A DNA stretch of 64,000 bases, taken from the NCBI RefSeq assembly GCF_964194025.1, contig NC_134469.1:6510001-6574000 (forward strand), written 5' to 3'. The stretch is from Convolutriloba macropyga. Lineage: Eukaryota. Positions 16,644 to 49,779 of the stretch are shown here, one piece after another. The stretch's first letter is position 1. Each line of letters begins with the position of its first letter. Below the pieces are notes generated by a model. That model saw only the letters and a list, made by a program, of their open reading frames with translations, had not been told where the DNA came from and did not search any database. A program made the position numbers and the translations under genes.

Positions 16644-16716
16644 GCATCGGTGGTTCAGTGGTAAAGTTGTCGCCTGCCACGCGATAGACCCGGGTTCGAT
16701 AGACCCGGCCGATGCA
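16644..16716 (+). pseudogene. 73-nt tRNA-Gly variant with duplicated GATAGACCCGG (T-loop/B box disrupted), followed by the long spacer
   Basis: GCGATAGACCCGGGTTCGATAGACCCGGCCGATGCA. The same class occurs at 17811, ~19.4, ~20.5, 21521, 41862, 43436, 43992, ~44.75 and ~46.2 kb. Confidence 0.88.
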
Positions 16717-16977
16717 ATTATTATCTGCGCATCAAAGCTTTTCTCCCGCCCATACCTACCTTTAGAGACCAATTGTCATAGCATGGCAAATGGGCGTATA
16801 AGCAGGCTAGTAATCTATATCAAGCCGTAAACAATAAGGGCCATATAATTTGCCAACCAGCGCAAATTCTGATTCTTTCGCCCGCGCAGACAAAAATGAC
16901 AGAGAAAAATTCGCACGCAAAAAAGTGCACCCAGAGAAATATATCAATATAGAGTATGTCCCTACCAGTATTGTCAG
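16717..16977 (+). repeat. Representative long spacer (~260 bp) of the ~334-bp unit
   Basis: ATCAAAGCTTTTCTCCCGCCCATACCTACCTTTAGAGACCAATTGTCATAGCATGGCAAATGGGCGTATAAGCAGGCTAG.... Copies lie in 0-6.6 kb, at 13.2, 16.7-21.8 and 41.9-49.3 kb. Confidence 0.92.
16739..16742 (+). terminator. Putative Pol III oligo-T terminator at the start of the long spacer (equivalents at 13193, 17907, 41958, 42490, 49047)
   Basis: TTTT ~23 nt downstream of the tRNA 3' end. T4 is the minimal metazoan Pol III terminator. Confidence 0.6.
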
Positions 16978-17127
16978 GAATCGGTGGTTGAGTGGTAGAA
17001 TTGTCGCCTGCCACAAGATAGACCCGGGTTCATTTCCCGGCCAATGCAACTTATTATCTGCGCACGAAAAATGCGCAAATCATTATCAGAGAATAGCAAA
17101 GAAAAACGGGCCCCGAGGAAAATGCGC

Positions 17128-17165
17128 ACTCTATAATCATACTCTATAATCATATATTTTTCTCT
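17128..17165. other. Local 25-bp inversion of the leader plus a 13-bp duplication
   Basis: 17141-17165 ACTCTATAATCATATATTTTTCTCT is the reverse complement of the standard AGAGAAAAATATATGATTATAGAGT. ACTCTATAATCAT is repeated at 17128-17140. Confidence 0.92.
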
Positions 17166-20100: not shown

Positions 20101-22313
20101 TCGTCTGCAACGCGATACACCCGTGTTCGATTCCCGGCCGATGCAACTTAATATCTGCACACAACAAATGCGCGAATTATTATCAGAGAATAGCAGAGCA
20201 AAACGCGCACGCAGAGGAAAATGCGCACTAAGAGAAAAATATATGATTATAGAGTATGTCCCTTCCAGTCTTGTCAAGCATCGGTGGTTCAGTGGCAGAA
20301 TTGTCGCCTTCCACGAGCTAGACCCGGGTTCGATTCCCGGCCGATGCAACTTATTATCTGCGCATGATAAATGCGCATATTATTATCAGAGAATAGCAGA
20401 GAAAAATGCGCACGCAGAGAAAAACGAGCACGCAGACAAAACCGCGCACGCAGAGCAAAATGCTCACGCAAAGAAAAAATATGATTAGAGAGGATGTCCC
20501 TACCAGTACTTTCAAGCATCGGTGGTTCAGAGGTAAAATTGTCGCCTGCCACGCGATAGACACGGGTTTGATAGACCCGGCCGATGCAACTTATTATCTG
20601 CGCATCAAAGCTTCTCTCCCGCCCATACCTACCCTTAGAGACCAATTGTCATAGCATGGCAAATGGGCCTATAAGCAGGCTAGTAAGCTATATCAAGCGG
20701 TAAACGATAAGGGCCACCTAATTTGCAAACCAGCGCAAATTCTAATTCTTTTGCCCGCGCAGAAGAAAATGACAGAGAAAAATTCGCACGCAAAAAAGCG
20801 CACCAAGAGAAATAAATCAATATAGAGTTTGTCCCTACCAGTATTGTCAGGCATTGGTGGCTAAGTGGTAGAATTGTCGACTGCCACAAGATAGACCCGG
20901 GTTCCGTTCCCGTCCGACGAAACTTATTATCTGCGCACGAAAAATGCGCAAATTATTATCAGAGAATAGCAGAGAAAAATGCGCACGCAGAGAAAAACGC
21001 GCACGTAGACAAAAACGGGCACGCATAGCAAAATGCGCACGCAGAGAAAAATTTATGATTATAGAGTAAGTCCCTACCAGGTTTGTCAAGCATCGGTGGT
21101 TCAGTGGTAAAATTATCACCTGCCACGCGATAGACCCGGGTTCGACTCCCGGCCCATGCAACTTATTATCTGCGCACGAATTATTATCAGAGAATAGCAG
21201 AGAAAAACGCGCACAAAGAGCAAAATGCGCACGCAGAGAAAAATATATGATTATAGAGTATGTCCCTACGATTATTGTCAAGCATCGGTGGTTCAGTGGT
21301 AGAATTGTCGCCTGCCACGCGATAGACCAGGGTTCGATTCCCGGCCGATGCAACTTATTATCTGCGCACGATAAATGCGCATATTATTATCAGAGAATAG
21401 CAGATAAAAATGCGCACGCAGAGAAAAACCCGCACGCAGACAAAACCGCGCACGCAGAGGAAAATGCTCACGCAAAGAAAAATATATGATTAGAGAGGAT
21501 GTCCCCACCAGTACTTTCAAGCATCGGTGGTTCAGTGGTAAAAATGTCGCCTGCCATGCGATAGACCCGGGTTCGATAGACCCGGCCGATGCAACTTATT
21601 ATCTGCGCATCAAAGCTTTTCTCCCGCCATACCAACCTCTAGAGACCAATTGTCATAGAATGGCAAATGGGCGTATAAGCAGTCTAGTAAGCTATATCAA
21701 GCGGTAAACGATAAGGGCCACCTAATTTGCAAACCAGCGCAAATTCTAATTCTTTTGCCCGCGCAGAAGAAAATGGCAGAGAAAAATTCGCATGCAAAAA
21801 AGCGCACCAAGAGAAATATATCAAAATAGAGTATGTCCCTACCAGTATTTTCAGGCATCGGTGGTTCAGTGGTAGAATTGTCGACTGCCACAAGCTAGAC
21901 CCGGGTTCGATTCCCGGGCAATGAAACTTATTATCTGCGCACGAAAAATGCGCAAATTATTATCAGAGAATAGCAGAGAAAAACGCGCACGCAGACAAAA
22001 ACGCGCAAGCAGATGAAAATGCGCACCCAGAGAAAAATGAACTATTGAAGAGTATGTCCCTACCAGTTTGTCAAGCATCGGTGGTTCAGTGGTAGAATTG
22101 TCGCCTGCCACGCGATAGACCCGGGTTCGATTCCCGTCCGATGCAACTTATTATCTGCGCACGAAAAATGCGCAAATTATTATCAGAGAATAGCAGAGAA
22201 AGATGCGCACGCAGATAAAAACGCGCACGTAGACAAAAACGGGCACGCATAGGAAAATGCGCACGCAGAGAAAAATATATCATTATAGAGTAGGTCCCTA
22301 CCACGTTTGTCAA

Positions 22314-22384
22314 GCATCGGTGGTTCAGTGGTAGAATTGTCGCCTGCCACGCGATAGACCCGGGTTCGATTCCCGGCCGATGCA
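22314..22384 (+). tRNA. tRNA-Gly(GCC), array-consensus copy
   Basis: Cloverleaf: GCATCGG/CCGATGC, GTTC/GAAT, GTCGC/GCGAT with loop CTGCCAC, CCGGG/CCCGG with loop TTCGATT, discriminator A. Confidence 0.8.
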
Positions 22385-23094
22385 ACTTAATATTTGCGCA
22401 CGAAAAATTCGCAAATTATTATCAGAGAATAGCAGAGAAAAACACGCACAAAGAGGATAATACGCACGCAGAGAAAAATATATGATTATAGAGTATGTCC
22501 TTACGATTAATGTCAAGCATCGGTGGTTCAGTGGTAGAATTGTCGCCTGCCACGTGATAGACCCGGGTTCGATTCCCGTCCGATGCAACTTATTATCTGC
22601 TCACGAAAAATGCGCAAATTATTATCAGAGAATAGCAGAGAAAAATGCGCACGCAGATAAAGACGCGCACGTAGACAAAAACGCGCACGCAGACAAAACC
22701 GTGCACGCAAAGGAAAATGCGCATGCAAAGAAAAATATATGATTAGAGAGGATGTCCCTACCAGTGCTTTCAAGCACCGGTGGTTCAGTGGTAGGATTGT
22801 CGCCTGCAACGCGATAGACCCGGGTTCGACTCCCGGCCGATGCAACTTATTATCTGCGCACGATAAATGCGCAAATTATTATCAGAGAAAAGCAGAGAAA
22901 AACGCGCACAAAGAAGAAAATGCGCACGCAGAGAAAAATATATGATTATAGAATATGTCCCTACGATTATTGTCAAGCATCGGTTGTTCAGTGGTAGAAT
23001 TGTCGCCTGCCACGCGATAGACCCGGGTTCGATTCCCCTCCGATGCAACTTATTATCTGTGCACGAAAAATGCGCAAATTATTATCAGAGAATA

Positions 23095-23215
23095 GCAGAG
23101 AAAAATGCGCACGCAGATAAAAACGCGCACGTAGACAAAAACGCGCACGTAGACAAAAACGCGCACGCAGACAAAAACGGGCACGCATAGGAAAATGCGC
23201 ACGCAGAGAAAAATA
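23095..23215 (+). repeat. 18-bp spacer minisatellite GCAGA(G/C)AAAAA(C/T)GCGCAC, expanded example in a 275-bp unit
   Basis: Successive GCAGAGAAAAATGCGCAC / GCAGATAAAAACGCGCAC / GTAGACAAAAACGCGCAC x2 / GCAGACAAAAACGGGCAC / GCATAGGAAAATGCGCAC. Confidence 0.92.
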
Positions 23216-23251
23216 TATGATTATAGAGTAGGTCCCTACCACGTTTGTCAA

Positions 23252-23322
23252 GCATCGGTGGTTCAGTGGTAGAATTGTCGCCTGCCACGCGATAGACCCG
23301 GGTTCGATTCCCGGCCGATGCA
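23252..23322 (+). tRNA. tRNA-Gly(GCC), array-consensus copy
   Basis: Identical to the 71-nt consensus. Confidence 0.8.
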
Positions 23323-23690
23323 ACTTATTATTTGCGCACGAAAAATTCGCAAATTATTATCAGAGAATAGCAGAGAAAAACACGCACAAAGAGGATAATA
23401 CGCACGCAGAGAAAAATATATGATTATAGAGTATGTCCTTACGATTATTGTCAAGCATCGGTGGTTCAGTGGTAGAATTGTCGCCTACCACGCGATAGAC
23501 CTGGGTTCGATTCCCCGATGCAACTTATTATCTGCGCACGATAAATGCGCATATTATTATCAGAGAATAGCAGAGAAAAATGCACACGCAGAGAAAAACG
23601 CGCACGCAGACAAAACCGCGCACGCAAAGGAAAATGCGCATGCAAAGAAAAATATATGATTAGAGAGGATGTCCCTACCAGTGCTTTCAA

Positions 23691-23761
23691 GCATCGGTGG
23701 TTCAGTGGTAGGATTGTCGCCTGCAACGCGATAGACCCGGGTTCGACTCCCGGCCGATGCA
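23691..23761 (+). tRNA. Gly-scaffold tRNA-like gene with GCA (Cys) anticodon, representative
   Basis: All stems pair (D stem GTTC/GGAT with G:U), loop CTGCAAC, T loop TTCGACT. Related copies at 22774, 25016, 32586, 33917, 35212, 36078, 38396, 40980. Confidence 0.6.
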
Positions 23762-23892
23762 ACTTATTATCTGCGCACGATAAATGCGCAAATTATTATC
23801 AGAGAAAAGCAGAGAAAAACGCGCACAAAGAAGAAAATGCGCACGCAGAGAAAATATATGATTATAGAGTATGTCCCTACGATTTTTCTCAA

Positions 23893-23963
23893 GCATCGGT
23901 GGTTCAGTGGTAGAATTGTCGCCTGCCACGCGATAGACCCGGGTTCGATTCCCGGCCGATGCA
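23893..23963 (+). tRNA. tRNA-Gly(GCC), array-consensus copy
   Basis: Identical to consensus. Confidence 0.8.
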
Positions 23964-24131
23964 ACTTATTATCTGCGCACGATAAATGCGCAAATTATTA
24001 TCAGAGAATAGCAGATAAAAATGCGCACGCAGAGAAAAACCCGCACGCAGACAAAACCGCGCACGCAGAGGAAAATGCTCACGCAAAGAAAAATATATGA
24101 TTAGAGAGGATGTCCCCACCAGTACTTTCAA

Positions 24132-24202
24132 GCATCGGTGGTTCAGTGGTAGAATTGTCGCCTTCCACGCGATAGACCCGGGTTCGATTCCCGGCCGATG
24201 CA
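24132..24202 (+). tRNA. tRNA-Gly(TCC) produced by a single anticodon change
   Basis: Consensus except for loop CTTCCAC. Confidence 0.7.
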
Positions 24203-24334
24203 ACTTATTATTTGCGCACGAAAAATTCGCAAATTATTATCAGAGAATAGCAGAGAAAAACACGCACAAAGAGGATAATACGCACGCAGAGAAAAATGTA
24301 TGATTATAGAGTATGTCCTTACGATTATTGTCAA

Positions 24335-24405
24335 GCATCGGTGGTTCAGTGGTAGAATTGTCGCCTGCCACGCGATAGACCCGGGTTCGATTCCCGGCCG
24401 ATGCA
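24335..24405 (+). tRNA. tRNA-Gly(GCC), array-consensus copy
   Basis: Identical to consensus. Confidence 0.8.
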
Positions 24406-24573
24406 ACTTATTATCTGCGCACGATAAATGCGCATATTATTATCAGAGAATAGCAGATAAAAATGCGCACGCAGAGAAAAACCCGCACGCAGACAAAACC
24501 GCGCACGCAGAGGAAAATGCTCACGCAAAGAAAAATATATGATTAGAGAGGATGTCCCCACCAGTACTTTCAA

Positions 24574-24644
24574 GCATCGGTGGTTCAGTGGTAGAATTGT
24601 CGCCTTCCACGCGATAGACCCGGGTTCGATTCCCGGCCGATGCA
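24574..24644 (+). tRNA. tRNA-Gly(TCC), second copy
   Basis: Consensus except for loop CTTCCAC; 442 bp from the first copy. Confidence 0.7.
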
Positions 24645-25457
24645 ACTTATTATTTGCGCACGAAAAATTCGCAAATTATTATCAGAGAATAGCAGAGAAA
24701 AACACGCACAAAGAGGATAATACGCACGCAGAGAAAAATGTATGATTATAGAGTATGTCCTTACGATTATTGTCAAGCATCGGTGGTTCAGTGGTAGAAT
24801 TGTCGCCTGCCACGCGATAGACCTGGGTTCGATTCCCGGCCGATGCAACTTATTATCTGCGCACGAAAAATGCGCATATTATTATCAGAGAATAGCAGAG
24901 AAAAATGCACACGCAGAGAAAAACGCGCACGCAGACAAAACCGCGCACGCAGAGGAAAATGCACATGCAAAGAAAAATATATGATTAGAGAGGATGTCCC
25001 CACCAGTGCTTTCAAGCATCGGTGGTTCAGTGGTAGGATTGTCGCCTGCAACGCAATAGACCTGGGTTCGACTCCCGGCCGATGCAACTTATTATCTGCG
25101 CACGATAAATGCGCAAATTATTATCAGAGAAAAGCAGAGAAAAACGCTCACAAAGAAGAAAATGCGCACGCAGAGAAAAATATATGATTATAGAGTATGT
25201 CCCTACGATTTTTCTCAAGCATCGGTGGTTCAGTGGTAGAATTGTCGCCTGCCACGCGATAGACCTGGGTTCGATTCCCGGCCGATGCAACTTATTATCT
25301 GCGCACGAAAAATGCGCATATTATTATCAGAGAATAGCAGAGAAAAATGCACACGCAGAGAAAAACGCGCACGCAGACAAAACCGCGCACGCAGAGGAAA
25401 ATGCGCATGCAAAGAAAAATATATGATTATAGAGTATGTCCCTACGATTTTTCTCAA

Positions 25458-25528
25458 GCATCGGTGGTTCAGTGGTAGAATTGTCGCCTGCCACGCGATA
25501 GACCCGGGTTCGATTCCCGGCCGATGCA
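25458..25528 (+). tRNA. tRNA-Gly(GCC), array-consensus copy
   Basis: Identical to consensus. Confidence 0.8.
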
Positions 25529-27063
25529 ACTTATTATCTGCGCACGATAAATGCGCATATTATTATCAGAGAATAGCTGAGAAAAATGCGCACGCAGAGA
25601 AAAACGCGCACGCAGACAAAACCGCTCACGCAGAGGAAAATGTGCACGCAAAGAAAAATATATAATTAGAGAGGATGTCCCTACCAGTACTTTCAAGCAT
25701 CGGTGGTTGAGTGGTAGAATTGTCGCCTGCAACGCGATAGACCCGGGTTCGACTCCCGGCCGATGCAACTTATTATCTGCGCACGATAAATGCGCAAATT
25801 ATTATCAGAGAAAAGCAGAGAAAAACGCGCACAAAGAAAAAAACGCGCACAAAGAGGAAAATAAATGATTATAGAGTTTGTCCCTACGATTATTGTCAAG
25901 CATCAGTGGTTCAGAGGTAGAATTGTCGCCTGCCACGCGATAGGCCCGGGTTCGATTCCCGGCCGATGCAACTTATTATCTGCCTACGATAATTGCGCAT
26001 ATTATTATCAGAGAATAGCAGTGAAAAATGCGCACGCAGAGAAAAACTAGCACGTAGACAAAAACGCGCACGCAGACAAAACCGCGCACGCATAGGAAAA
26101 TGCGCACGCAGAGAAAATTATATGATGATAAAGTAGGTCCCTACCAGGTTTGTCAAGCATCGGTGGTTCAGTGGTAGAATTGTCGCCTGCCACGCGATAG
26201 ACCAGGGTTCGATTCCCGTCCGATGAAACTTATTATCTGCGCACGATAAATGCGCATATTATTATCAGAGAATAGCTGAGAAAAATGCGCACGCAGAGAA
26301 AAACGCGCACGCAGACAAAACCGCTCACGCAGAGGAAAATGTGCACGCAAAGAAAAATATATAATTAGAGAGGATGTCCCTACCAGTACTTTCAAGCATC
26401 GGTGGTTGAGTGGTAGAATTGTCGCCTGCCACGCGATAGACCCGGGTTCGATTCCCGGCCGATGCAACTTATTATCTGCGCACGATAAATGCGCATATTA
26501 TTATCAGAGAATAGCAGAGAAAAACGCGCACAAAGAGGAAAATAAATGATTATAGAGTTTGTCCCTACGATTATTGTCAAGCATCAGTGGTTCAGAGGTA
26601 GAATTGTCGCCTGCCACGCGATAGGCCCGGGTTCGATTCCCGGCCGATGCAGCTTATTATCTGCCTACGATAATTGCGCATATTATTATCAGAGAATAGC
26701 AGCGAAAAATGCGCACGCAGAGAAAAACTAGCACGTAGACAAAAACGCGCACGCAGACAAAACCGCGCACGCATAGGAAAATGCGCACGCAGAGAAAATT
26801 ATATGATGATAAAGTAGGTCCCTACCAGGTTTGTCAAGCATCGGTGGTTCAGTGGTAGAATTGTCGCCTGCCACGCGATAGACCAGGGTTCGATTCCCGT
26901 CCGATGAAACTTATTATCTGCGCACGAAAAATACGCAAATTATTATCAGAGAATAGCAGAAAAATGCGCACGCAGAGAAAAACTCGCACGTAGACAAAAA
27001 CGCGCACGCAGACAAAAACGGGCACGCATAGGAAAATGCGCACGCAGAGAAAATATATATGAT

Positions 27064-27069
27064 TATAGA
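27064..27069 (+). promoter_or_regulatory. TATA-like element (TATAGA) at -30 from the tRNA 5' end, representative of most units
   Basis: GATTATAGAG begins 33 nt upstream of the tRNA, preceded by AAAATATAT. The position fits a TFIIIB-binding region. Confidence 0.45.
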
Positions 27070-27100
27070 GTAGGTCCCTACAAGGTTTGTCAAGCATCGG

Positions 27101-27111
27101 TGGTTCAGTGG
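27101..27111 (+). promoter_or_regulatory. Pol III type-2 A box (representative)
   Basis: TGGTTCAGTGG at tRNA positions 8-18. Confidence 0.85.
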
Positions 27112-27142
27112 TAGAATTGTCGCCTGCCACGCGATAGACCCG

Positions 27143-27153
27143 GGTTCGATTCC
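27143..27153 (+). promoter_or_regulatory. Pol III type-2 B box (representative)
   Basis: GGTTCGATTCC matches the B-box consensus GGTTCGANTCC. Confidence 0.9.
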
Positions 27154-27169
27154 CGGCCGATGCAACTTA

Positions 27170-27173
27170 TTTT
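27170..27173 (+). terminator. T4 Pol III terminator created by an A>T change in TTATTATC
   Basis: ACTTATTTTCT here versus the usual ACTTATTATCT. Confidence 0.55.
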
Positions 27174-30100
27174 CTGCGCACGAAAAATGCGCAAACTATT
27201 ATCAGAGAATAGCAGAGAAAAACGCGCACAAAGAGGAAAATGCGCACGCCGAGAAAAATATATGGTTATAGAATATGTCCCTACGATTATTGTCAAGCAT
27301 CGGTTGTTCAGTGGTAGAATTGTCGCCTGCCACGCGATAGACCCGGGTTCGATTCCCGTCCGATGCAACTTATTATCTGCGCACGAAAAATGCGCAAATT
27401 ATTATCAGAGAATAGCAGAGAAAAATGCGCACGCAGAGAAACGCGCACGTAGACAAAAACGCGCACGCAGACAAAAACGGGCACGCATAGGTAAATGCGC
27501 ACGCAGAGAAAAATATATGATTATAGAGTAGGTCCCTACCACGTTTGTCAAGCATCGGTGGTTCAGTGGTAGAGTTGTCGCCTGCCACGCGATAGACCCG
27601 GGTTCGATTCCCGGCCGATGCACCTTATTATTTGCGCACGAAAAATTCGCAAATTATTATCAGAGAATAGCAGAGAAAAACACGCACAAAGAGGATAATA
27701 CGCACGCAGAGAAAAATATATGATTATAGAGTATGTCCTTACAATTATTGTCAAGCATCGGTGGTTCAGTGGTAGAATTGTCGCCTGCCACGCGATAGAC
27801 CTGGGTTCGATTCCCGGCCGATGCAACTTATTATCTGGGCACGATAAATGCGCATATTATTATCAGAGAATAGCAGAGAAAAATGCACACGCAGAGAAAA
27901 ACGCGCACGCAGACAAAACCGCGCACGCAGAGGAAAATGCGCATGCAAAGAAAAATATATGATTATAGAGTATGTCCCTACGATTATTCTCAAGCATCGG
28001 TGGTTCAGTGGTAGAATTGTCGCCTGCCACGCGATAGACCCGGGTTCGATTCCCGGCCGATGCAACTTATTATCTGCGCACGATAAATGCGCAAATTATT
28101 ATCAGAGAAAAGCAGAGAAAAACGCGCACAAAGAAGAAAATGCGCACGCAGAGAAAAATATATGATTATAGAGTATGTCTCTACGATTATTCTCAAGCAT
28201 CGGTGGTTCAGTGGTAGAATTGTCGCCTGCCACGCGATAGACCCGGGTTCGATTCCCGGCCGATGCAACTTATTATCTGCGCACGATAAATGCGCATATT
28301 ATTATCAGAGAATAGCTGAGAAAAATGCGCACGCAGACAAAACCGCTCACGCAGAGGAAAATGTGCACGCAAAGAAAAATATATAATTAGAGAGGATGTA
28401 CCTACCAGTACTTTCAAGCATCGGTGGTTGAGTGGTAGAATTGTCGCCTGCCACGCGATAGACCCGGGTTCGATTCCCGGCCGATGCAACTTATTATCTG
28501 CGCACCATAAATGCGCATATTATTGTCAGAGAATAGCAGAGAAAAACGCGCACAAAGAAAATATATGATTATAGAGTTTGTCCCTACGATTATTGTCAGG
28601 CATCAGTGGTTCAGAGGTAGAATTGTCGCCTGCCACGCGATAGACCCTGGTTCGATTCCCGCCCGATACAACTTATTATCTGCCTACGACAAATGCGCAT
28701 ATTATTATCAGAGAATAGCAGCGAAAAATGCGCACGCAGAGAAAAACGTGCACGCAGACAAAACCGCGCACGCATAGGAAAATGCGCACTCAGAGAAAAA
28801 TATATGATCATAAAGTAGGTCCCTACCAGGTTTGTCAAGCATCGGTGGTTCAGTGGTAGAATTGTCGCCTGCCACGCGTTAGACCCGGGTTCGATGCCCG
28901 GCCGATGCAACTTATTATCTGCGCACGATAAATGCGCATATTATTATCAGAGAATAGCTGAGAAAAATGCGCACGCAGACAAAACCACTCACGCAGAGGA
29001 AAATGTAAACGCAAAGAAAAATATGATTGGAGAGGATGTCCCTACCAGTACTTTCAAGCATCGGTGGTTGAGTGGTAGAATTGTCGCCTGCCACGCGATA
29101 GACCCGGGTTCGATTCCTGTCCGATGCAACTTATTATCTGCGCACGAAAAATGCGCAAATTATTATCAGAGAATAGCAGAGAAAAATGCGCACGCAGAGA
29201 AGCGCGCACGTAGACAAAAACGCGCACGCAGACAAAAACGGGCACGCATAGGTAATTGCGCACGCAGAGAAAAAAATATGATTATAGAGTAGGTCCCTAA
29301 CGGTTTTGTCAAACATCGTTGGTTCAGTGGTAGAGTTGTCGCCTGCCACGCGATAGACCCGGGTTCGATTCCCGGCCGATGCAACTTATTATCTGCGCAC
29401 GATAAATGCGCATATTATTATCAGAGAATAGCTGAGAAAAATGCGCACAAAGAAGAAAATGCGCACGCAGAGAAAAATATATGATTATAGAGTATGTCCC
29501 TACGATTATTCTCAAGCATCGGTGGTTCAGTGGTAGAATTGTCGCCTGCCACGCGATAGACCCGGGTTCAATTCCCGGCCGATGCAACTTATTATCTGCG
29601 CACGATAAATGCGCAAATTATTATCAGAGAAAAGCAGAGAAAAACGCGCACAAAGAAGAAAATGCGCACGCAGAGAAAAATATATGATTATAGAGTATGT
29701 CTCTACGATTATTCTCAAGCATCGGTGGTTCAGTGGTAGAATTGTCGCCTGCCACGCGATAGACCCGGGTTCGATTCCCGGCCGATGCAACTTATTATCT
29801 GCGCACGATAAATGCGCATATTATTATCAGAGAATAGCTGAGAAAAATGCGCACGCAGACAAAACCGCTCACGCAGAGGAAAATGTGCACGCAAAGAAAA
29901 ATATATAATTAGAGAGGATGTCCCTACCAGTACTTTCAAGCATCGGTGGTTGAGTGGTAGAATTGTCGCCTGCCACGCGATAGACCCGGGTTCGATTCCC
30001 GGCCGATGCAACTTATTATCTGCGCACCATAAATGCGCATATTATTGTCAGAGAATAGCAGAGAAAAACGCGCACAAAGAAGAAAATATATGATTATAGA

Positions 30101-33100: not shown

Positions 33101-33269
33101 TTATTATCTGCGCACGATAAATGCGCATATTATTATCAGAGAATAGCTGAGAAAAATGCGCACGCAGACAAAACCGCGCACGCATAGGAAAATGCGCACG
33201 CAGAGAAAAATATATGATGATAAAGTAGGTCCCTACCAGGTTTGTCAAGCATCGGTGGTTCAGTGGTAG

Positions 33270-35880
33270 AATTGTCGCCTGCCACGCGATAGACCCGGGT
33301 TCGATTCCCGTCCGATGCAACTTATTATCTGCGCACGAAAATGCGCAAATTATTATCAGAGAATAGCAGAGAAAAATGCGCACGCAGAGAAACGCGCACG
33401 CAGACAAAAACGGGCACGCATAGGTAAATGCGCACGCAGAGAAAAATATATGATCATAGAGTAGGTCCCTACCACGTTTGTCAAGCATCGGTGGTTCAGT
33501 GGTAGAATTGTCGCCTGCCACGCGATAGACCCGGGTTCGATTCCCGGCCGATGCAACTTAATATTTGCGCACGAAAAATTCGCAAATTATTATCAGAGAA
33601 AAACACGCACAAAGAGGATAAAACGCACGCAGAGAAAAATATATGATTATAGAGTATGTCCTTACGATTATTGTCAAGCGTCGGTGGTTCAGTGGTAGAA
33701 TTGTCGCCTGCCACGCGATAGACCTGGGTTCGATTCCCGGCCGATGCAACTTATTATCTGCGCACGATAAATGCGCATATTATTATCAGAGAATAGCCGA
33801 GAAAAATGCACAAGCAGAGAAAAACGCGCACGCAGACAAAACCGCGCACGCATAGGAAAATGCGCATGCAAAGAAAAATATATGATTAGAGAGGGTGTCA
33901 TTACCAGTGCTTTCAAGCATCGGTGGTTCAGTGGTAGGATTGTCGCCTGCAACGCGATAGACCCGAGTTCGACTCCCGGCCGATGCAACTTATTATCTGC
34001 GCACGATGAATGCGCAAATTATTATCAGAGAAAAGCAGAGAAAAATGCGCACAAAGAAGAAAATGCGCACGCAGAGAAAAATATATGATTATAGAGTATG
34101 TCCCTACGATTATTCTCAAGCATCGGTGGTTCAGTGGTAGAATTGTCGCCTGCCACGCGATAGACCCGGGTTCGATTCCCGGCCGATGCAACTTATTATC
34201 TGCGCACGATAAATGCGCATATTATTATCAGAGAATAGCTGAGAAAAATGCGCACGCAGACAAAACCGCTCACGCAGAGGAAAATGTGCACGCAAAGAAA
34301 AATATATAATTAGAGAGGATGTCCCTACCAGTACTTTCAAGCATCGGTGGTTGAGTGGTAGAACTGTCGCCTGCCACGCGATAGACCCGGGTTCGATTCC
34401 CGGCCGATGCAACTGATTATTTGCGCACGAAAAATTCGCAAATTATTATCAGAGAATAGCAGAGAAAAACACGCACAAAGAGGATAAAACGCACGCAGAG
34501 AAAAATATATGATTATAGAGTAGGTCCCTACCACGTTTGTCAAGGATCGGTGGTTCAGTGGTAGAATTGTCGCCTGCCACGCGATAGACCCGGGTTCGAT
34601 TCCCGTCCGATGCAACTTATTATCTGCGCACGAAAATGCGCAAATTATTATCAGAGAATAGCAGAGAAAAATGCGCACGCAGAGAAACGCGCACGCAGAC
34701 AAAAACGGGCACGCATAGGTAAATGCGCACGCAGAGAAAAATATATGATCATAGAGTAGGTCCCTACCACGTTTGTCAAGCATCGGTGGTTCAGTGGTAG
34801 AATTGTCGCCTGCCACGCGATAGACCCGGGTTCGATTCCCGGCCGATGCAACTTAATATTTGCGCACGAAAATTTCGCAAATTATTATCAGAGAAAAACA
34901 CGCACAAAGAGGATAAAACGCACGCAGAGAAAAATATATGATTATAGAGTATGTCCTTACGATTATTGTCAAGCGTCGGTGGTTCAGTGGTAGAATTGTC
35001 GCCTGCCACGCGATAGACCTGGGTTCGATTCCCGGCCGATGCAACTTATTATCTGCGCACGATAAATGCGCATATTATTATCAGAGAATAGCCGAGAAAA
35101 ATGCACAAGCAGAGAAAAACGCGCACGCAGACAAAACCGCGCACGCATAGGAAAATGCGCATGCAAAGAAAAATATATGATTAGAGAGGGTGTCCTTACC
35201 AGTGCTTTCAAGCATCGGTGGTTCAGTGGTAGGATTGTCGCCTGCAACGCGATAGACCCGAGTTCGACTCCCGGCCGATGCAACTTATTATCTGCGCACG
35301 ATGAATGCGCAAATTATTATCAGAGAAAAGCAGAGAAAAATGCGCACAAAGAAGAAAATGCGCACGCAGAGAAAAATATATGATTATAGAGTATGTCCCT
35401 ACGATTATTCTCAAGCATCGGTGGTTCAGTGGTAGAATTGTCGCCTGCCACGCGATAGACCCGGGTTCGATTCCCGGCCGATGCAACTTATTATCTGCGC
35501 ACGATAAATGCGCATATTATTATCAGAGAATAGCTGAGAAAAATGCGCACGCAGACAAAACCGCTCACGCAGAGGAAAATGTGCACGCAAAGAAAAATAT
35601 ATAATTAGAGAGGATGTCCCTACCAGTACTTTCAAGCATCGGTGGTTGAGTGGTAGAACTGTCGCCTGCCACGCGATAGACCCGGGTTCGATTCCCGGCC
35701 GATGCAACTGATTATTTGCGCACGAAAAATTCGCAAATTATTATCAGAGAATAGCAGAGAAAAACACGCACAAAGAGGATAAAACGCACGCAGAGAAAAA
35801 TATATGATTATAGAGTAGGTCCCTACCACGTTTGTCAAGGATCGGTGGTTCAGTGGTAGAATTGTCGCCTGCCACGCGAT
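33270..35880 (+). repeat. 1295-bp tandem duplication (6 units)
   Basis: Diagnostic variants recur at +1295 (tRNA 33917/35212; ORFs 33356/34651 and 34131/35426). Confidence 0.88.
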
Positions 35881-38800
35881 AGACCTGGGTTCGATTCCCG
35901 GCCGATGCAACTTATTATCTGCGCACGATAAATGCGCATTTTATTATCAGAGAATAGCCGAGAAAAATGCACACGCAGAGAAAAACGCGCATGCAGACAA
36001 AACCGCGCACGCAGAGGAAAATGCGCATGCAAAGAAAAATATATGATTAGAGAGGGTGTCCTTACCAGTGCTTTCAAGCATCGGTGGTTCAGTGGTAGGA
36101 TTGTCGCCTGCAACGCGATAGACCCGGGTTCGACTCCCGGCCGATGCAACTTATTATCTGCGCACGATGAATGCGCAAATTATTATCAGAGAAAAGCAGA
36201 GAAAAACGCGCACAAAGAAGAAAATGCGCACGCAGAGAAAAATATATGATTATAGAGTATGTCCCTACGATTATTCTCAAGCATCGGTGGTTTAGTGGTA
36301 GAATTGTCGCCTGCCACGCGATAGACCCGGGTTCGATTCCCGGCCGATGCAACTTATTATCTGCGCACGATAAATGCGCATATTATTATCAGAGAATAGC
36401 TGAGAAAAATGCGCACGCAGACAAAACCGCTCACGCAGAGGAAAATGTGCACGCAAAGAAAAATATATAATTAGAGAGGATGTCCCTACCAGTACTTTCA
36501 AGCATCGGTGGTTGAGTGGTAGAATTGTCGCCTGCCACCCGATAGACCCGGGTTCGATTACCGGCCGATGCAACTTATTATCTGCGCATATTATTGTCAG
36601 AGAATAGCAGAGAAAAACGCGCACAAAGAAGAAAATATATGATTATAGAGTTTGTCCCTACGATTATTGTCAAGCATCAGTGGTTCAGAGGTAGAATTGT
36701 CGCCTGCCACGGGATAGACCCTGGTTCGATTCCCGCCCGATGCAACTTATTATCTGCCTACGACAAATGCGCATATTATTATCAGAGAATAGCAGCGAAA
36801 AATGCGCACGCAGAGAAAAACGTGCACGCAGACAAAACCGCGCACGCATAGGAAAATGCGCACGCAGAGAAAAATATATGATGATAAAGTAGGTCCCTAC
36901 CAGGTTTGTCAAGCATCGGTGGTTCAGTGGTAGAATTGTCGCCTGCCACGCGATAGACCCGGGTTCGATTCCCGGCCGATGCAACTTATTATCTGCGCAC
37001 GATAAATGCGCATATTATTATCAGAGAATAGCTGAGAAAAATGCGCACGCAGACAAAACCACTCACGCAGAGGAAAATGTAAACGCAAAGAAAAATATAT
37101 GATTGGAGAGGATGTCCCTACCAGTACTTTCAAGCATCGGTGGTTGAGTGGTTGAATTGTCGCCTGCAACGCGATAGACCCGGGTTCGATTCCCGGCCGA
37201 TGCAACTTATTATCTGCGCACGATAAATGCGCATATTATTATCAGAGAATAGCTGAGAAAAACGCGCACAAAGAGCAAAATATATGATCATAGAGTAGGT
37301 CCCTACCACGTTTGTCAAGCATCGGTGGTTCAGTGGTAGAATTGTCGCCTGCCACGCGATAGACCCGGGTTCGATTCCCGGCCGATGCAACTTAATATTT
37401 GCGCACGAAAAATTCGCAAATTATTATCAGAGAAAAACACGCACAAAGAGGATAAAACGCACGCAGAGAAAAATATATGATTATAGAGTATGTCCTTACG
37501 ATTATTGTCAAGCGTCGGTGGTTCAGTGGTAGAATTGTCGCCTGCCACGCGATAGACCTGGGTTCGATTCCCGGCCGATGCAACTTATTATCTGCGCACG
37601 ATAAATGCGCATATTATTATCAGAGAATAGCCGAGAAAAATGCACAAGCAGAGAAAAACGCGCACGCAGACAAAACCGCGCACGCATAGGAAAATGCGCA
37701 TGCAAAGAAAAATATATGATTAGAGAGGGTGTCCTTACCAGTGCTTTCAAGCATCGGTGGTTCAGTGGTAGGATTGTCGCCTGCAGCGCGATAGACCCGA
37801 GTTCGACTCCCGGCCGATGCAACTTATTATCTGCGCACGATGAATGCGCAAATTATTATCAGAGAAAAGCAGAGAAAAATGCGCACAAAGAAGAAAATGC
37901 GCACGCAGAGAAAAATATATGATTATAGAGTATGTCCCTACGATTATTCTCAAGCATCGGTGGTTCAGTGGTAGAACTGTCGCCTGCCACGCGATAGACC
38001 CGGGTTCGATTCCCGGCCGATGCAACTTATTATTTGCGCACGAAAAATTCGCAAATTATTATCAGAGAATAGCAGAGAAAAACACGCACAAAGAGGATAA
38101 AACGCACGCAGAGAAAAATATATGATTATAGAGTAGGTCCCTACCACGTTTGTCAAGGATCGGTGGTTCAGTGGTAGAATTGTCGCCTGCCACGCGATAG
38201 ACCTGGGTTCGATTCCCGGCCGATGCAACTTATTATCTGCGCACGATAAATGCGCATTTTATTATCAGAGAATAGCCGAGAAAAAAGCACACGCAGAGAA
38301 AAACGCGCATGCAGACAAAACCGCGCACGCAGAGGAAAATGCGCATGCAAAGAAAAATATATGATTAGAGAGGGTGTCCTTACCAGTGCTTTCAAGCATC
38401 GTTGGTTCAGTGGTAGGATTGTCGCCTGCAACGCGATAGACCCGGGTTCGACTCCCGGCCGATGCAACTTATTATCTGCGCACGATGAATGCGCAAATTA
38501 TTATCAGAGAAAAGCAGAGAAAAACGCGCACAAAGAAGAAAATGCGCACGCAGAGAAAAATATATGATTATAGAGTATGTCCCTACGATTATTCTCAAGC
38601 ATCGGTGGTTTAGTGGTAGAATTGTCGCCTGCCACGCGATAGACCCGGGTTCGATTTCCGGCCGATGCAACTTATTATCTGCGCACGATAAATGCGCATA
38701 TTATTATCAGAGAATAGCTGAGAAAAATGCGCACGCAGACAAAACCGCTCACGCAGAGGAAAATGTGCACGCAAAGAAAAATATATAATTAGAGAGGATG

Positions 38801-39610
38801 TCCCTACCAGTACTTTCAAGCATCGGTGGTTGAGTGGTAGAATTGTCGCCTGCCACGCGATAGACCCGGGTTCGATTACCGGCCGATGCAACTTATTATC
38901 TGCGCATATTATTGTCAGAGAATAGCAGAGAAAAACGCGCACAAAGAAGAAAATATATGATTATAGAGTTTGTCCCTACGATTATTGTCAAGCATCAGTG
39001 GTCCAGAGGTAGAATTGTCGCCTGCCACGCGATAGACCCTGGTTCGATTCCCGCCCGATGCAACTTATTATCTGCCTACGACAAATGCGCATATTATTAT
39101 CAGAGAATAGCAGCGAAAAATGCGCACGCAGAGAAAAACGTGCACGCAGACAAAACCGCGCACGCATAGGAAAATGCGCACGCAGAGAAAAATATATGAT
39201 GATAAAGTAGGTCCCTACCAGGTTTGTCAAGCATCGGTGGTTCAGTGGTAGAATTGTCGCCTGCCACGCGATAGACCCGGGTTCGATTCCCGGCCGATGC
39301 AAGTTATTATCTGCGCACGATAAATGCGCATATTATTATCAGAGAATAGCTGAGAAAAATGCGCACGCAGACAAAACCACTCACGCAGAGGAAAATGTAA
39401 ACGCAAAGAAAAATATATGATTGGAGAGGATGTCCCTACCAGTACTTTCAAGCATCGGTGGTTGAGTGGTTGAATTGTCGCCTGCAACGCGATAGACCCG
39501 GGTTCGATTCCCGGCCGATGCAACTTATTATCTGCGCACGATAAATGCGCATATTATTATCAGAGAATAGCTGAGAAAAACGCGCACAAAGAGCAAAATA
39601 TATGATTATA
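35700..39610 (+). repeat. ~1.6-kb block repeated at +2318
   Basis: tRNA 36078/38396; ORFs 35850/38168, 36292/38610, 36924/39242; shared 13-bp deletion at ~36585/~38903. Confidence 0.85.
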
Positions 39611-42600
39611 GAGTTTGTCCCTACAATTATTGTCAAGCATCAGTGGATCAGAGGTAGAATTGTCGCCTGCCACTCGATAGACCCGGGTTCGTTTCCCGCC
39701 CGATGCAACTTATTATCTGCGCACGATAAATGCGCATATTATTATCAGAGAATAGCAGCGAAAAATGCGCACGCAGAGAAAAACGCGCACGCAGACAAAA
39801 CCGCGCACGCATAGGAAAATGCGCACGCAGAGAAAAATATATGATGATAAAGTAGGTCCCTACCAGGTTTGTCAAGCATCGGTGGTTCAGTGGTAGAATT
39901 GTCGCCTGCCACGCGATAGACCAGGGTTCGATTCCCGCCCGATGCAACTTATTATCTGCGCACGAAAAATGCGCAAATTATTATCAGATTAGCAGAGAAA
40001 AACGCGCACAAAGAGGAAAATAGATGATTATAGAGTTTGTCCCTACGATTATTGTCAAGTATCAGTGGTTCAGAGGTAGAATTGTCGCCTGCCACGCGAT
40101 AGACCCGGGTTCGAGTCCCGCCCGATGAAACTTATTATCTGCGCACGATAAATGCGCATATTATTATCAGAGAAAAGCAGCGAAAAATGTGCACGCAGAG
40201 AAAAACGCGCACGCAGACAAAACCGCGCACGCAGAGGAAAATGCGCACGCAAAGAAAAATATATGATTAGAGAGGATGTCCATACCAGTACTTTCAAGCA
40301 TCGGTGGTTCAGTGGTAAAAATTGTCACCTGCCACGCGATAGACCCGGTTTCGATTCCCGGCCGATGCAACTTATTATCTGCGCACGATAAATGCGCATA
40401 TTATTATCAGAGAATAGCAGCGAAAAATGTGCACGCAGAGAAAAACGCGCACGCAGACAAAAACGGGCACGCATAGGTAAATGCGCACGCAGAGAAAAAT
40501 ATATGATTATAGAGTAGGTCCCTACCACGTTTGTCAAGCATCGGTGGTTCAGTGGTAGAATTGTCGCCTGCCACGCGATAGACTCGGGTTCGATTCCCGG
40601 CCGATGCAACTTATTATTTGCGCACGACAAATTCGCAAATTATTATCAGAGAATAGCAGAGAAAAACACGCACAAAGAGGATAAAACGCACGCAGAGAAA
40701 AATATATGATTATAGAGTATGTCCTTACGATTATTGTCAAGCATCGGTGGTTCAGTGGTAGAATTGTCGCCTGCCACGCGATAGACCTGGGTTCAATTCT
40801 CGGCCGATGCAACTTATTATCTGCGCACGAAAAATGCGCATATTATTATCAGAGAATAGCAGAGAAAAATGCACACGCAGAGAAAAACGCGCACGCAGAC
40901 AAAACCGCGCACGCAGAGGAAAATGCGCATGCAAAGAAAAATATATGATTAGAGAGTGTGTCCTTACCAGTGCTTTCAAGCATCGGTGGTTCAGTGGTAG
41001 GATTGTCGCCTGCAACGCGATAGACCCGGGTTCGACTCCCGGCCGATGCAACTTATTATCTGCGCACGATAAATGCGCAAATTATTATCAGAGAAAAGCT
41101 GAGAAAAATGCGCACGCAGACAAAACCGCTCACGCAGAGGAAAATGTGCACGCAAAGAAAAATACATAATTAGAGAGGATGTCCCTACCAGTACTTTCAA
41201 GCATCGGTGGTTGAGTGGTAGAATTGTCGTCTGCCACGCGATAGACCCGGGTTCGATTCCCGGCCGATGCAACTTATTATCTGCGCACGATAAATGCGCA
41301 TATTATTGTCAGAGAATAGCAGAGAAAAATGCGCACGCAGAGAAAAACGTGCACGCAGACAAAACCGCGCACGCATAGGAAAATACGCACGCAGAGAAAA
41401 ATATATGATGATAAAGTAGGTCCCTACCAGGTTTGTCAAGCATCGGTGGTTCAGTGGTAGAATTGTCTCCTGCCACGCGATAGACCAGGGTTCGATTCCC
41501 GCCCGATGCAACTTATTATCTGCGCACGAAAAATGCGCAAATTATTATCAGATTAGCAGAGAAAAACGCGCACAAAGAGGAAAATATATGATTATAGAGT
41601 TTGTCCCTACGATTATTGTCAAGCATCAGTGGTTCAGAGGTAGAATTGTCGCCTGCCACGCGATAGACCCGGGTTCGAGTCCCGCCCGATGCAACTTATT
41701 ATCTGCGCACGATAAATGCGCATATTATTATCAGAGAATAGCAGCGAAAAATGTGCACGCAGAGAAAAACGCACACGCAGACAAAACCGCGCACGCAGAG
41801 GAAAATGCGCACGCAAAGAAAAATATATGATTAGAGAGGATGTCCATACCAGTACTTTCAAGCATCGGTGGTTCAGTGGTAAAATTGTCGCCTGCCACGC
41901 GATAGACCCGGGTTCGATAGACCCGGCCGATGCAACGTATTATCTGCGCATCAAAGCTTTTCTCCCGCCCATACCTACCTTTAGAGACCAATTGTCATAG
42001 CATGGCAAATGGGCGCATAAGCAGGCTAGCAAGCTATATCAAGCGGTAAACAATAAGGGCCATATAATTTGCAAACCAGCGCAAATTCTGATTCTTTTGC
42101 CCGCGCAGAAAATGACAGAGAAAAATTCGCAGGCAAAAAAGCGTACCCAGAGAAATATATCAATATAGAGCATGTCCCTACCACTATTGTCATGCATCGA
42201 TGGTTCAGTGGTAGAATTGTCGCCTGCCACAATATAGACCCGTGTTCGATTCCCGGCCAAGGGCACTTGCTATCTGCGCACGAAAACAGCGCAACTTATT
42301 ATCATAGAATAGCAGAGAAAAACGCGCACGCACACAAAAACGTGCAACCAGAGAAAAATATATGATTATAGAGTATGTCCCTATCAGTTTTGTCAAGCAT
42401 CGGTGGTTCAGTGGTAGAATTATTGCCTGCCACTCGATAGACCCGGGTTCGATTCCCAGCCGATGCAACTTATTATCTGCGCATCAAAATTTTTCTCCCG
42501 CCCATACCTACCTTTAGAGACCAATTGTCATAGCATGGCAAATTGGCGTATAAGCAGGCTAGTAAGCTATATCAAGCGGTAAACAATAAGGCGCATATAA

Positions 42601-48600: not shown

Positions 48601-48952
48601 TTTCCGGCCCATGCAACTTATTATCTGCGCAAGAAAAATGCGCAAATTATTATCAGAAAATAGCAGAAAAAAACGCGCACAAAGAGGAAAAAGCGCACGC
48701 AGAGAAAAATATATGATCATGGGGTATGTCCCTACGAGTATTGTCAAGCATCGGTGGTTCAGTGGCACAATTGTCTCCTGCCACGCGATAGACCCGGGTT
48801 CGATTCCCGGCTGATGCAACTTATTATCTGCTCACAAAAATTGCGCAAAATTATTGTCAAAGAATAGGAGAGAAAAATGCGCACACAGAGGAAAAATGCG
48901 CACGCAGAGAAAAATATATGAGGATAGAGTATGTCCCTACGATTATTGTTAA

Positions 48953-49023
48953 GCATCAGTGGTTCAGAGGTAGAATTGTCGCCTGCCACGCGATAGACCC
49001 GGGTTCGATTCCCGGCTGATGCA
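48953..49023 (+). tRNA. tRNA-Gly(GCC) variant with compensated acceptor stem and downstream terminator
   Basis: GCATCAG/CTGATGC fully paired, other stems intact, TTTT at 49047-49050. Confidence 0.7.
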
Positions 49024-49708: not shown

Positions 49709-49779
49709 GCATCGGTGGTTCAGTGGTAGAATTGTCGCCTACCACGCGATAGACCCGGGTTCGATTCCCGGCCGATGCA
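49709..49779 (+). tRNA. tRNA-Gly(ACC)-like gene with intact cloverleaf
   Basis: Consensus except for loop CTACCAC. Confidence 0.65.

What the first reader, a model, noticed from the sequence alone, without database searches (positions are those of the whole stretch)
21850..41960. Terminator-less tRNA cassettes: possible natural polycistronic tRNA-spacer processing array
Seen: the standard unit continues ...GATGCA ACTTATTATCTGCGCAC with no T4, and the + strand spacer is T-poor. A T-run right after the tRNA occurs regularly only in the long unit, which is absent from ~21.85 to ~41.95 kb. Scattered T4-5 runs do occur (e.g. ~23883, ~25449, 27170, ~29304, ~32779, ~35939). Known: Pol III needs >=T4 to stop. 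RNase P and RNase Z cut at tRNA folds, which engineered polycistronic tRNA-Gly-gRNA cassettes exploit. Inference: transcripts would read through several units and be cut into tRNAs plus 114-204-nt spacer RNAs, with tRNAs acting as punctuation in a repeat-spacer array.
Basis: inference. Interest (0 to 1): 0.8.

Follow-up and report, generated by a model that had tools for sequence, protein, structure and literature searches.

The report
tRNA-Gly gene array lacking canonical terminators
A young block of about 90 head-to-tail glycine-tRNA gene copies in an animal genome has lost the usual stop signal for its RNA polymerase and keeps only weak substitutes, so some run-on into the next copy is plausible, but no RNA data exist and nothing suggests the spacers are useful RNAs.

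Summary
Window 21850-41960 holds 91 same-strand tRNA-Gly-GCC units. 89 of them have no T>=4 within 32 nt of the tRNA end, and only 9 T>=4 runs occur in 20 kb. The next T4 lies a median of 1240 nt away (maximum 3492 nt, up to 16 tRNAs crossed). Spacers form an 18-nt ladder from 114 to 204 nt.

As a control, 12 of 14 dispersed, sequence-identical tRNA-Gly-GCC genes in the same genome carry T4-7 within 9 nt.

"Terminator-less" overstates it:
- Every spacer carries 1-3 TTATT motifs, which give about 32% termination with human Pol III in vitro.
- One motif sits 2 nt after the tRNA, and one sits just after a 6-bp hairpin.
- Most units keep their own A and B boxes and an upstream TATA-like element.

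The short unit appears derived from a longer ancestral unit that had T4-7 at +21 to +24; that form survives at the array edges. Recent mutations hit tRNA bodies about as often as spacers, new T4 runs arise at roughly the neutral rate, and an anticodon-mutant subfamily was co-amplified. This is satellite-like evolution.

Spacers are a low-complexity minisatellite with no special fold and no Rfam match. The only public runs found look like DNA, so transcription is untested.

Verdict: a real, modestly interesting variant of known tandem tRNA-gene arrays. Leaky run-on is plausible; a functional repeat-spacer RNA system is unsupported. First-stage notes list other tRNA-like arrays elsewhere in this genome.

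The parts
1..64000 (+). Part of an ~83-kb head-to-tail array of tRNA-Gly-GCC-derived units (G000:C2, about 6.498-6.581 Mb). The window holds 257 tRNAs, all on the + strand.
21850..41960 (+). Central, youngest block: 91 short units of 182-275 bp arranged as an alternating two-subfamily higher-order repeat. 19 tRNAs are identical to the dispersed canonical gene and 56 differ by 2 mismatches or fewer. 89 of 91 lack T>=4 within 32 nt.
23893..23963 (+). Representative tRNA-Gly-GCC, identical to the dispersed canonical copies (67.9 bits), with exact A box (TGGTTCAGTGG) and B box (GGTTCGATTCC).
23964..23980 (+). Conserved 17-nt trailer ACTTATTATCTGCGCAC, as conserved as the tRNA itself. It contains the first weak T-tract, TTATTAT, starting 2 nt after the tRNA.
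23974..23992 (+). Predicted 6-bp hairpin (TGCGCA, 7-nt loop, TGCGCA; -8 kcal/mol). Present in 63 of 86 spacers and ending 1-3 nt before the second TTATT.
23995..24001 (+). Second weak T-tract TTATTAT, at +32 in 80 of 90 spacers.
24011..24094 (+). 18-nt minisatellite (consensus GCAGAGAAAAAYGCGCAC, about 1-6 copies per spacer). It produces the 18-nt ladder of spacer lengths and the A-run/T-run strand asymmetry.
23855..23869 (+). TATA-like element TATATGATTATAGAG at -38 to -24 of the next tRNA. A TATA[TA] match lies upstream of 81 of 91 units, and the element is better conserved than its surroundings.
23883..23887 (+). One of the few new T5 runs, lying 6 nt upstream of the next tRNA. The same variant occurs at 25209 and 25448, and a similar one at 32779.
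41862..41961 (+). Right boundary: a long unit with a 73-nt tRNA whose T arm and B box are damaged (GGTTCGATAGACCCGG), followed by the trailer and T4 at 41958-41961. The ~200-nt segment that the short unit lacks comes next.
21521..21620 (+). Left boundary: the same long-unit type, with a 73-nt damaged tRNA and T4 at 21617-21620.

Best explanation
This is a satellite-like tandem array of tRNA-Gly-GCC gene units in an animal genome. It evolves by unequal crossing-over, which gives the higher-order repeats, and by slippage of an internal 18-bp minisatellite.

The ancestral ~355-bp unit carried T4-7 at +21 to +24. A derived short unit lost the ~200-nt segment that begins with that T-run, and it was then amplified into the central block.

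The short units are not truly terminator-less. Each keeps its own internal promoter, an upstream TATA-like element and a conserved trailer. Each has two or three weak TTATT tracts, one right after the acceptor stem and one right after a small hairpin.

If the array is transcribed, the inferred picture is this. Pol III would start in each unit. Termination would be leaky: a large share of transcripts would end at the TTATT tracts and the rest would run into the next one or two units. That would give some di- or trimeric precursors, which RNase P and RNase Z would resolve. The A-rich spacers would be released as by-products, not functional RNAs.

Shown: the anatomy, the missing T4, the derived status of the short unit and the near-neutral recent evolution. 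Inferred: transcription, the efficiency of the weak terminators and the processing.
For: - Missing T4 against controls: searches compared.
- The long unit with T4-7 is shared by both array edges and by the interspersed long units, and the short unit diverges exactly at +17.
- Higher-order repeat with 97-98% identical like-for-like copies.
- TTATT occurs in all 90 spacers, at +3 in 81, +32 in 80 and -10 in 31.
- A hairpin precedes the second tract in 63 of 86 spacers; only 0.3% of shuffles fold as well.
- T2AT2 gives 32% termination (PMC3141230).
- RNA helices enhance weak T-tracts (PMC9278858).
- A and B boxes are both exact in 46 of 91 units, and a TATA-like match lies upstream of 81 of 91.
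- The trailer and the tRNA are equally conserved: 0.035 and 0.036 non-consensus, against 0.13 upstream.
- Rare variants occur at 0.0115 per site in tRNA against 0.014-0.018 in flanks, p=0.06.
- 4.6 new T4 runs are expected neutrally and 8 are seen, in about 5 sequence contexts.
- 13 units with a Cys anticodon were co-amplified.
- Spacers are unstructured and match no RNA family.
Against: - No RNA evidence of any kind exists; the runs found look like DNA.
- The termination figures come from human Pol III in vitro at low UTP, and from yeast for the hairpin effect. The efficiency in this animal is unknown.
- The dispersed genes of this genome use T4-7, which suggests TTATT alone is not the preferred signal.
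- The array could be fully silent, which would make the transcription part of the account moot.
- The equal conservation of trailer and tRNA could reflect young age and homogenisation rather than function.
Confidence: 0.5

Rival explanations
1. The block is a transcriptionally silent tRNA-derived satellite or pseudogene array. It was amplified neutrally and is packed in repressive chromatin, like most copies of the Arabidopsis SYY cluster. Loss of the terminator was tolerated because nothing is transcribed, and the dispersed genes supply tRNA-Gly-GCC.
For: - Recent mutations hit tRNA bodies nearly as often as spacers.
- Only 46 of 91 units keep both boxes exact.
- 13 of 91 carry a Cys anticodon in a Gly body and were still amplified.
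- T4 runs arise at the neutral rate.
- At least 14 dispersed identical genes with proper terminators exist.
- Clustered tDNAs are silenced in most tissues in Arabidopsis (PMC12308677).
Against: - 19 units are identical to the canonical gene and 54 score 60 bits or more.
- The TATA-like element and the trailer are conserved.
- No excess of CpG transitions, which heavy methylation would leave, is seen.
- The SYY cluster itself is reactivated in specific cells, so silence need not be complete.
Confidence: 0.3
2. One reading: long obligate polycistronic Pol III transcripts span several units. tRNAs serve as punctuation for RNase P and RNase Z, releasing a ladder of 114-204-nt spacer RNAs that are the point of the array.
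For: - There is no T>=4 for a median of 1240 nt, and 73% of units have three or more tRNAs before the next T4.
- Engineered tRNA-Gly/gRNA arrays are transcribed and processed this way (PMC4982333).
Against: - There are weak terminators in every spacer.
- Every unit has its own promoter.
- The spacers are a low-complexity minisatellite of variable copy number with no fold signal or family match.
- There is no selection against T4 creation.
- The terminator-free unit is a derived deletion form.
- No RNA evidence exists.
Confidence: 0.08
3. The array is transcribed by Pol II as a long non-coding or small-RNA precursor, with the tRNA folds processed out secondarily.
For: The + strand has almost no AATAAA (2 in 20 kb) and no Pol III stops, so any polymerase could run long.
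Against: No Pol II promoter, exon structure or coding potential was found. There is no RNA evidence. The idea is purely permissive.
Confidence: 0.05

Closest known systems
Human tRNA genes with non-canonical Pol III terminators (Orioli et al. 2011, PMC3141230)
   Same: The tRNA genes lack T>=4 within 50 bp. Degenerate T-rich motifs, including T2AT2, terminate partly and allow read-through pre-tRNAs with long 3' trailers.
   Different: The human genes are dispersed and a backup T4 follows within tens to hundreds of bp. Here the next T4 lies up to 3.5 kb away, with up to 16 further tRNA genes in between. Termination was not measured here.
Entamoeba tRNA gene arrays with inter-genic short tandem repeats (Tawari et al. 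2008, PMC2652664)
   Same: Tandemly arrayed units carry tRNA genes separated by polymorphic short tandem repeats, and it is unknown whether all copies are transcribed.
   Different: Entamoeba units hold up to 5 different tRNAs and make up nearly the whole tRNA complement. Here there is a single isoacceptor, dispersed canonical copies also exist, and the array arose independently in an animal.
Arabidopsis SYY (Ser-Tyr-Tyr) tandem tDNA cluster (PMC12308677)
   Same: A large tandem array of redundant tRNA genes sits beside dispersed copies. It is largely silent but functional and is switched on in particular cells.
   Different: It is a plant cluster with three genes per unit. Loss of terminators is not reported as a feature there. 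The expression state is unknown here.
Dimeric tRNA genes of yeasts and synthetic polycistronic tRNA-gRNA (PTG) genes (PMC4982333; yeast cases and Xie et al. 2015 from my own knowledge)
   Same: Consecutive tRNAs have no canonical terminator between them and are resolved by RNase P and RNase Z. The synthetic systems also use tRNA-Gly.
   Different: Those have one promoter for the whole unit and short or designed spacers. Here every unit has its own promoter and weak stops, and no precursor has been shown.
tRF-1 / 3'-trailer fragments (from my own knowledge)
   Same: RNA released downstream of the RNase Z cut of a pre-tRNA is what a 'spacer RNA' would be.
   Different: tRF-1 fragments are about 15-30 nt and end at the T-run. 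The hypothetical products here would be 114-204 nt and end at the next RNase P site.

Membership tests
Eukaryotic type-2 Pol III tRNA gene | Cloverleaf scoring above the family threshold | tested here: met
   All 91 exceed the Rfam gathering score and 54 reach 60 bits or more. 19 are identical to the dispersed canonical gene.
Eukaryotic type-2 Pol III tRNA gene | Internal A box and B box | tested here: met
   A box exact in 63, B box exact in 67 and both exact in 46 of 91 units.
Eukaryotic type-2 Pol III tRNA gene | T>=4 terminator shortly after the 3' end | tested here: not met
   89 of 91 have none within 32 nt, and the median distance is 1240 nt. 12 of 14 dispersed copies have one within 9 nt.
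Eukaryotic type-2 Pol III tRNA gene | Evidence of transcription or a mature product from these copies | not testable with these tools
   Two run searches returned only DNA-like contig sets.
Non-canonical Pol III terminator (Orioli type) | Degenerate T-rich motif (T2VT2, T3VT and similar) within 50 bp of the tRNA end | tested here: met
   TTATT lies at +3 in 81 and at +32 in 80 of 90 spacers, and every spacer has at least one.
Non-canonical Pol III terminator (Orioli type) | Measured termination at the motif | not testable with these tools
   Only the human in vitro value is available: 32% for T2AT2.
Tandem tDNA array with short-tandem-repeat spacers (Entamoeba or SYY type) | Head-to-tail units each carrying tRNA gene(s) | tested here: met
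Tandem tDNA array with short-tandem-repeat spacers (Entamoeba or SYY type) | Short tandem repeats of variable copy number between the genes | tested here: met
   An 18-nt repeat at about 1-6 copies per spacer, giving the 114-204 nt ladder.
Tandem tDNA array with short-tandem-repeat spacers (Entamoeba or SYY type) | Several different tRNAs per unit | tested here: not met
   There is a single Gly-GCC body. Other anticodons are point mutants of it.
Polycistronic tRNA transcription unit (yeast dimeric genes, PTG) | No terminator between consecutive tRNAs | tested here: inconclusive
   There is no T>=4, but 1-3 weak TTATT tracts lie in each spacer.
Polycistronic tRNA transcription unit (yeast dimeric genes, PTG) | Downstream tRNAs depend on one upstream promoter | tested here: not met
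   Units carry their own A and B boxes and a TATA-like element.
Polycistronic tRNA transcription unit (yeast dimeric genes, PTG) | A precursor RNA containing two or more tRNAs is detected | not testable with these tools
   No RNA runs were found.
   The spacers are copies of one minisatellite-bearing sequence, with no fold signal.

The most novel reading that the evidence does not exclude
The array is actively transcribed by Pol III and read-through is the rule. Multi-tRNA precursors are cut by RNase P and RNase Z, and discrete A-rich spacer RNAs in an 18-nt ladder from 114 to 204 nt accumulate. This would be a natural counterpart, in an animal nucleus, of engineered polycistronic tRNA-Gly cassettes.
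Probability: 0.08. Interest if true: 0.75.

Novelty: new variant of a known kind. Interest (0 to 1): 0.4.

Why it matters
Tandem tRNA-gene arrays and tRNA genes with weak terminators are each known. A block of about 90 high-scoring tRNA genes with no canonical stop for kilobases combines the two.

It is a natural test bed for three questions:
- How far does Pol III runs when only T2AT2 tracts and small hairpins are available?
- What happens when an elongating Pol III meets the next gene's TFIIIB/TFIIIC complex?
- Are such arrays expressed or silenced?

If the array is transcribed, it would show natural multi-tRNA Pol III precursors in an animal. If it is silent, it is a clean example of a gene family turning into satellite DNA after losing a regulatory element.

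Tried and rejected
- RNA evidence. Two run searches, one on a 3-kb stretch and one on a 172-nt spacer with both junctions, returned six runs of one study with no record of kind. The four runs I laid hold 0.64-1.4 Gb of contigs, with longest records of 36-87 kb. That is roughly genome size and looks like whole-genome DNA. They confirm that the array exists in at least 3 samples, but they say nothing about RNA.
- Known RNA in the spacer. Rfam gave only tRNA hits, at E<=0.1 on 21400-24000 and at gathering score on the whole block.
- Structured spacer RNA. Three whole spacers fold no better than shuffles, with z-scores of -1.2, +0.4 and +0.5.
- Coding potential. ORFs in the array are repeat read-throughs, and no Pfam family reached its curated cut-off in the array or its flanks.
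- Methylation decay as a sign of silencing. No clear excess of CpG transitions was found.
- Selection to keep the + strand free of T4. Observed and neutral numbers are similar.
- Assembly artefact. Rejected, because the independent DNA contigs match at 95-100%. The only N gap lies 2.6 kb outside the array.
- Literature search for this same array or organism. Nothing specific was found.
- Organism identity. It is coded by the tools and I did not pursue it.


Full report
**What is there**

The window is G000:C2:6510001-6574000 of a 1.18-Gb genome; an earlier follow-up note of this scan calls it an animal genome. Background DNA is about 33-35% G+C. ARAGORN finds 257 tRNAs in the window, all on the + strand, and most are Gly-GCC. 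The array runs from about C2:6.498 Mb to 6.581 Mb. DNA beyond it holds no tRNAs, and no Pfam family reached its curated cut-off there. The only N gap lies 2.6 kb outside the array.

The tRNA body is an animal-type tRNA-Gly-GCC. Fourteen dispersed genes on other chromosomes are identical or nearly identical to the array consensus. The consensus is therefore this organism's real tRNA-Gly-GCC.

**Checking the observation**

In 21850-41960 there are 91 tRNAs.
- 19 are identical to the canonical gene and 56 differ by 2 mismatches or fewer.
- All 91 pass the Rfam gathering score, and 54 reach 60 bits or more.
- The 12-nt trailer ACTTATTATCTG follows 72 of them.
- Only 9 T>=4 runs start in the block, against 387 A>=4 runs.
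- 89 of 91 tRNAs have no T>=4 within 32 nt.
- The next T4 lies a median of 1240 nt and at most 3492 nt downstream.
- On average 5.7 further tRNAs are crossed before it, and at most 16. 90% of units have at least one tRNA before the next T4, and 73% have at least three.
- Spacer lengths 114, 132, 150, 168, 186 and 204 cover 69 of 90 spacers. They track the copy number of an 18-nt repeat with consensus GCAGAGAAAAAYGCGCAC.
- Background DNA has 114-165 T>=4 runs per 10 kb.

**Is it more than chance?**

Compositionally, no. The units are copies of each other, so the absence is one inherited state, and a 200-nt unit without T4 is not unlikely.

The meaningful control is functional. Of 14 dispersed tRNA-Gly-GCC genes, 12 with the same sequence and 2 differing at one or two positions, 12 have T4-7 within 9 nt of the 3' end. 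The other two have T3AT2 or T3 there. Other tRNA genes sampled in this genome (Ala, Arg, Gly, one His) also have T4 within 1-5 nt. This organism normally uses canonical Pol III terminators, and the array units lack them.

**Origin of the terminator-free unit**

At both ends of the array, and in scattered long units, the same trailer continues into T4-7 at +21 to +24. A ~200-nt segment follows the T-run. The short unit shares the first 16-17 nt of the trailer, then diverges and lacks that whole segment.

Array edges usually keep older variants, and the last unit on the right edge has the long form. I therefore infer that the long unit is ancestral, and that the short unit arose by loss of the terminator-bearing segment and was then amplified.

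The central block is a two-subfamily higher-order repeat. Like-for-like copies are up to 97-98% identical, which points to recent amplification. The eight long units nearest the block carry a 73-nt tRNA with a damaged T arm and B box.

**The units are not truly terminator-less**

Orioli et al. showed that human Pol III terminates partly at degenerate T-rich motifs. T2AT2 gave 32% termination in vitro, and such genes also produce read-through pre-tRNAs (PMC3141230).

- All 90 spacers of the block carry TTATT: at +3 in 81, at +32 in 80, and at -10 of the next tRNA in 31. There are 201 motifs in total.
- The first tract starts 2 nt after the acceptor stem.
- The second tract is preceded, 1-3 nt away, by a 6-bp hairpin in 63 of 86 spacers. 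The median energy is -7.8 kcal/mol, and only 0.3% of shuffles fold as well.
- In yeast, an RNA helix next to a weak T-tract turns it into a moderately efficient terminator (PMC9278858).

Borrowing the human figure for TTATT alone gives these estimates:
- the mean chance of reaching the next tRNA is about 0.38;
- the chance of including a third tRNA is about 0.15, and a fourth about 0.06;
- a primary transcript would hold about 1.6 tRNAs on average.

These numbers are an inference from another species and from in vitro conditions at low UTP.

**Each unit looks self-sufficient**

A and B boxes are exact in 63 and 67 of 91 units, and both are exact in 46. A TATA-like match lies upstream of 81 of 91.

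The fraction of non-consensus bases per region is as follows:

| Region | Non-consensus fraction |
|---|---|
| tRNA | 0.036 |
| Trailer, +1 to +17 | 0.035 |
| TATA-like region | 0.076 |
| Upstream overall | 0.13 |
| +18 to +55 | 0.094 |

The trailer with its TTATTAT is thus as well kept as the tRNA. This fits a past functional role or recent homogenisation.

**Signs of near-neutral, satellite-like evolution**

- Rare variants (in 2 units or fewer) fall on tRNA bodies at 0.0115 per site-unit, against 0.014-0.018 in the flanks (p=0.06).
- Older shared variants are fewer in the tRNA: 30% of sites against 52% in the flanks (p=0.004).
- There are 650 single-substitution opportunities to create a T>=4 in the spacers. 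At the measured X>T rates, 4.6 events are expected and 8 runs in about 5 contexts are seen. T4 is therefore neither purged nor favoured.
- Thirteen units have a Cys anticodon (GCA) in a Gly body and were amplified with the repeat.
- CpG transitions show no clear excess.

**The spacers as RNAs**

- They are low-complexity: A 40%, T 21%.
- Whole spacers fold no better than shuffles, with z-scores of -1.2, +0.4 and +0.5.
- They match no Rfam family.
- ORFs across the repeat are artefacts.

The comparison with a repeat-spacer array is therefore superficial. The spacers are variants of one sequence, and their length ladder is minisatellite slippage.

**RNA evidence**

None could be obtained. Both run searches returned only runs of one study with no record of kind. 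The four runs I laid hold 0.64-1.4 Gb of contigs, with longest records of 36-87 kb. That is about genome size, so I read them as whole-genome DNA. They confirm the array in at least three samples, at high word depth, and they show junctions consistent with copy-number variants. They do not bear on transcription.

**Comparison with what is known**

- Large tDNA clusters have arisen many times in eukaryotes (PMC2888827).
- Entamoeba has arrays with short tandem repeats between the genes, and the transcription status of the copies is unknown (PMC2652664).
- The Arabidopsis SYY cluster is silent in most tissues and reactivated in root-cap cells (PMC12308677).
- Engineered tRNA-Gly/gRNA arrays show that Pol III can make, and cells can process, tRNA-punctuated transcripts (PMC4982333).

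This locus combines a tandem tDNA array with loss of the canonical terminator. It is a new variant of known kinds.

**Verdict**

Of the interpretation, some read-through is plausible, but long obligate polycistrons and functional spacer RNAs are unsupported, and the anatomy argues against them in part.

My best account is a recently amplified, satellite-like tRNA-Gly array with leaky, non-canonical termination (confidence 0.5). Complete silence is the main rival (0.3).

Noticed in passing
window 22774-41050 (13 units, e.g. 22774-22844 and 23691-23761): A subfamily with a Cys anticodon (GCA) in an otherwise Gly-type body recurs at regular places in the higher-order repeat. Two units have TCC and one has ACC. 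If these were expressed and charged with Gly they would misread Cys codons.
   Followed up: partly
window 6600-13000: A very regular four-unit higher-order repeat of about 863 bp, with anticodons GAA, GCC, ACC, GCC and spacers of 134, 147, 149 and 148 nt, repeated six times. The 'Phe' GAA unit is a point-mutant Gly body.
   Followed up: no
L021 and L022 (G000:C15:46666001-46686000, minus strand): A second tRNA cluster. Seven tRNA-His-GTG copies and one Asn-type copy have their first T4 at +48, and an eighth His copy has it at +60, with TTA at +1 in most of these copies (GTA in one). The interleaved Ala, Arg and Gly genes have T4 at +1 to +3. Distant terminators are therefore not unique to the Gly array.
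   Followed up: no
window, -4 to -1 of the tRNAs; L001-L014: TCAA lies immediately upstream of 220 of 257 array tRNAs, and CAA or TCAA also precedes most dispersed Gly-GCC genes. This may be a conserved start-site or leader motif, reminiscent of the CAA motif of plant tRNA genes (the plant comparison is from my own knowledge).
   Followed up: no
window 21850-41960: Rare variants are rich in transversions: 105 transversions against 53 transitions outside CpG. That is unusual for animal DNA. It could reflect assembly or long-read errors in repeats, or a particular mutational process.
   Followed up: no
window 40779-42463: All four DNA runs contain a contig joining 40779 to 42463, skipping 1683 bp. 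This is either a structural variant in other individuals or another array copy with that junction.
   Followed up: no
window 16644-16716, 17811-17883, 19359-19431, 21521-21593, 41862-41934, 43436-43508, 43992-44064, 44754-44826: These 73-nt tRNA variants have a damaged T arm and B box (GGTTCGATAGACCCGG). All eight of them are followed by the long-unit trailer with T4 at about +24.
   Followed up: partly
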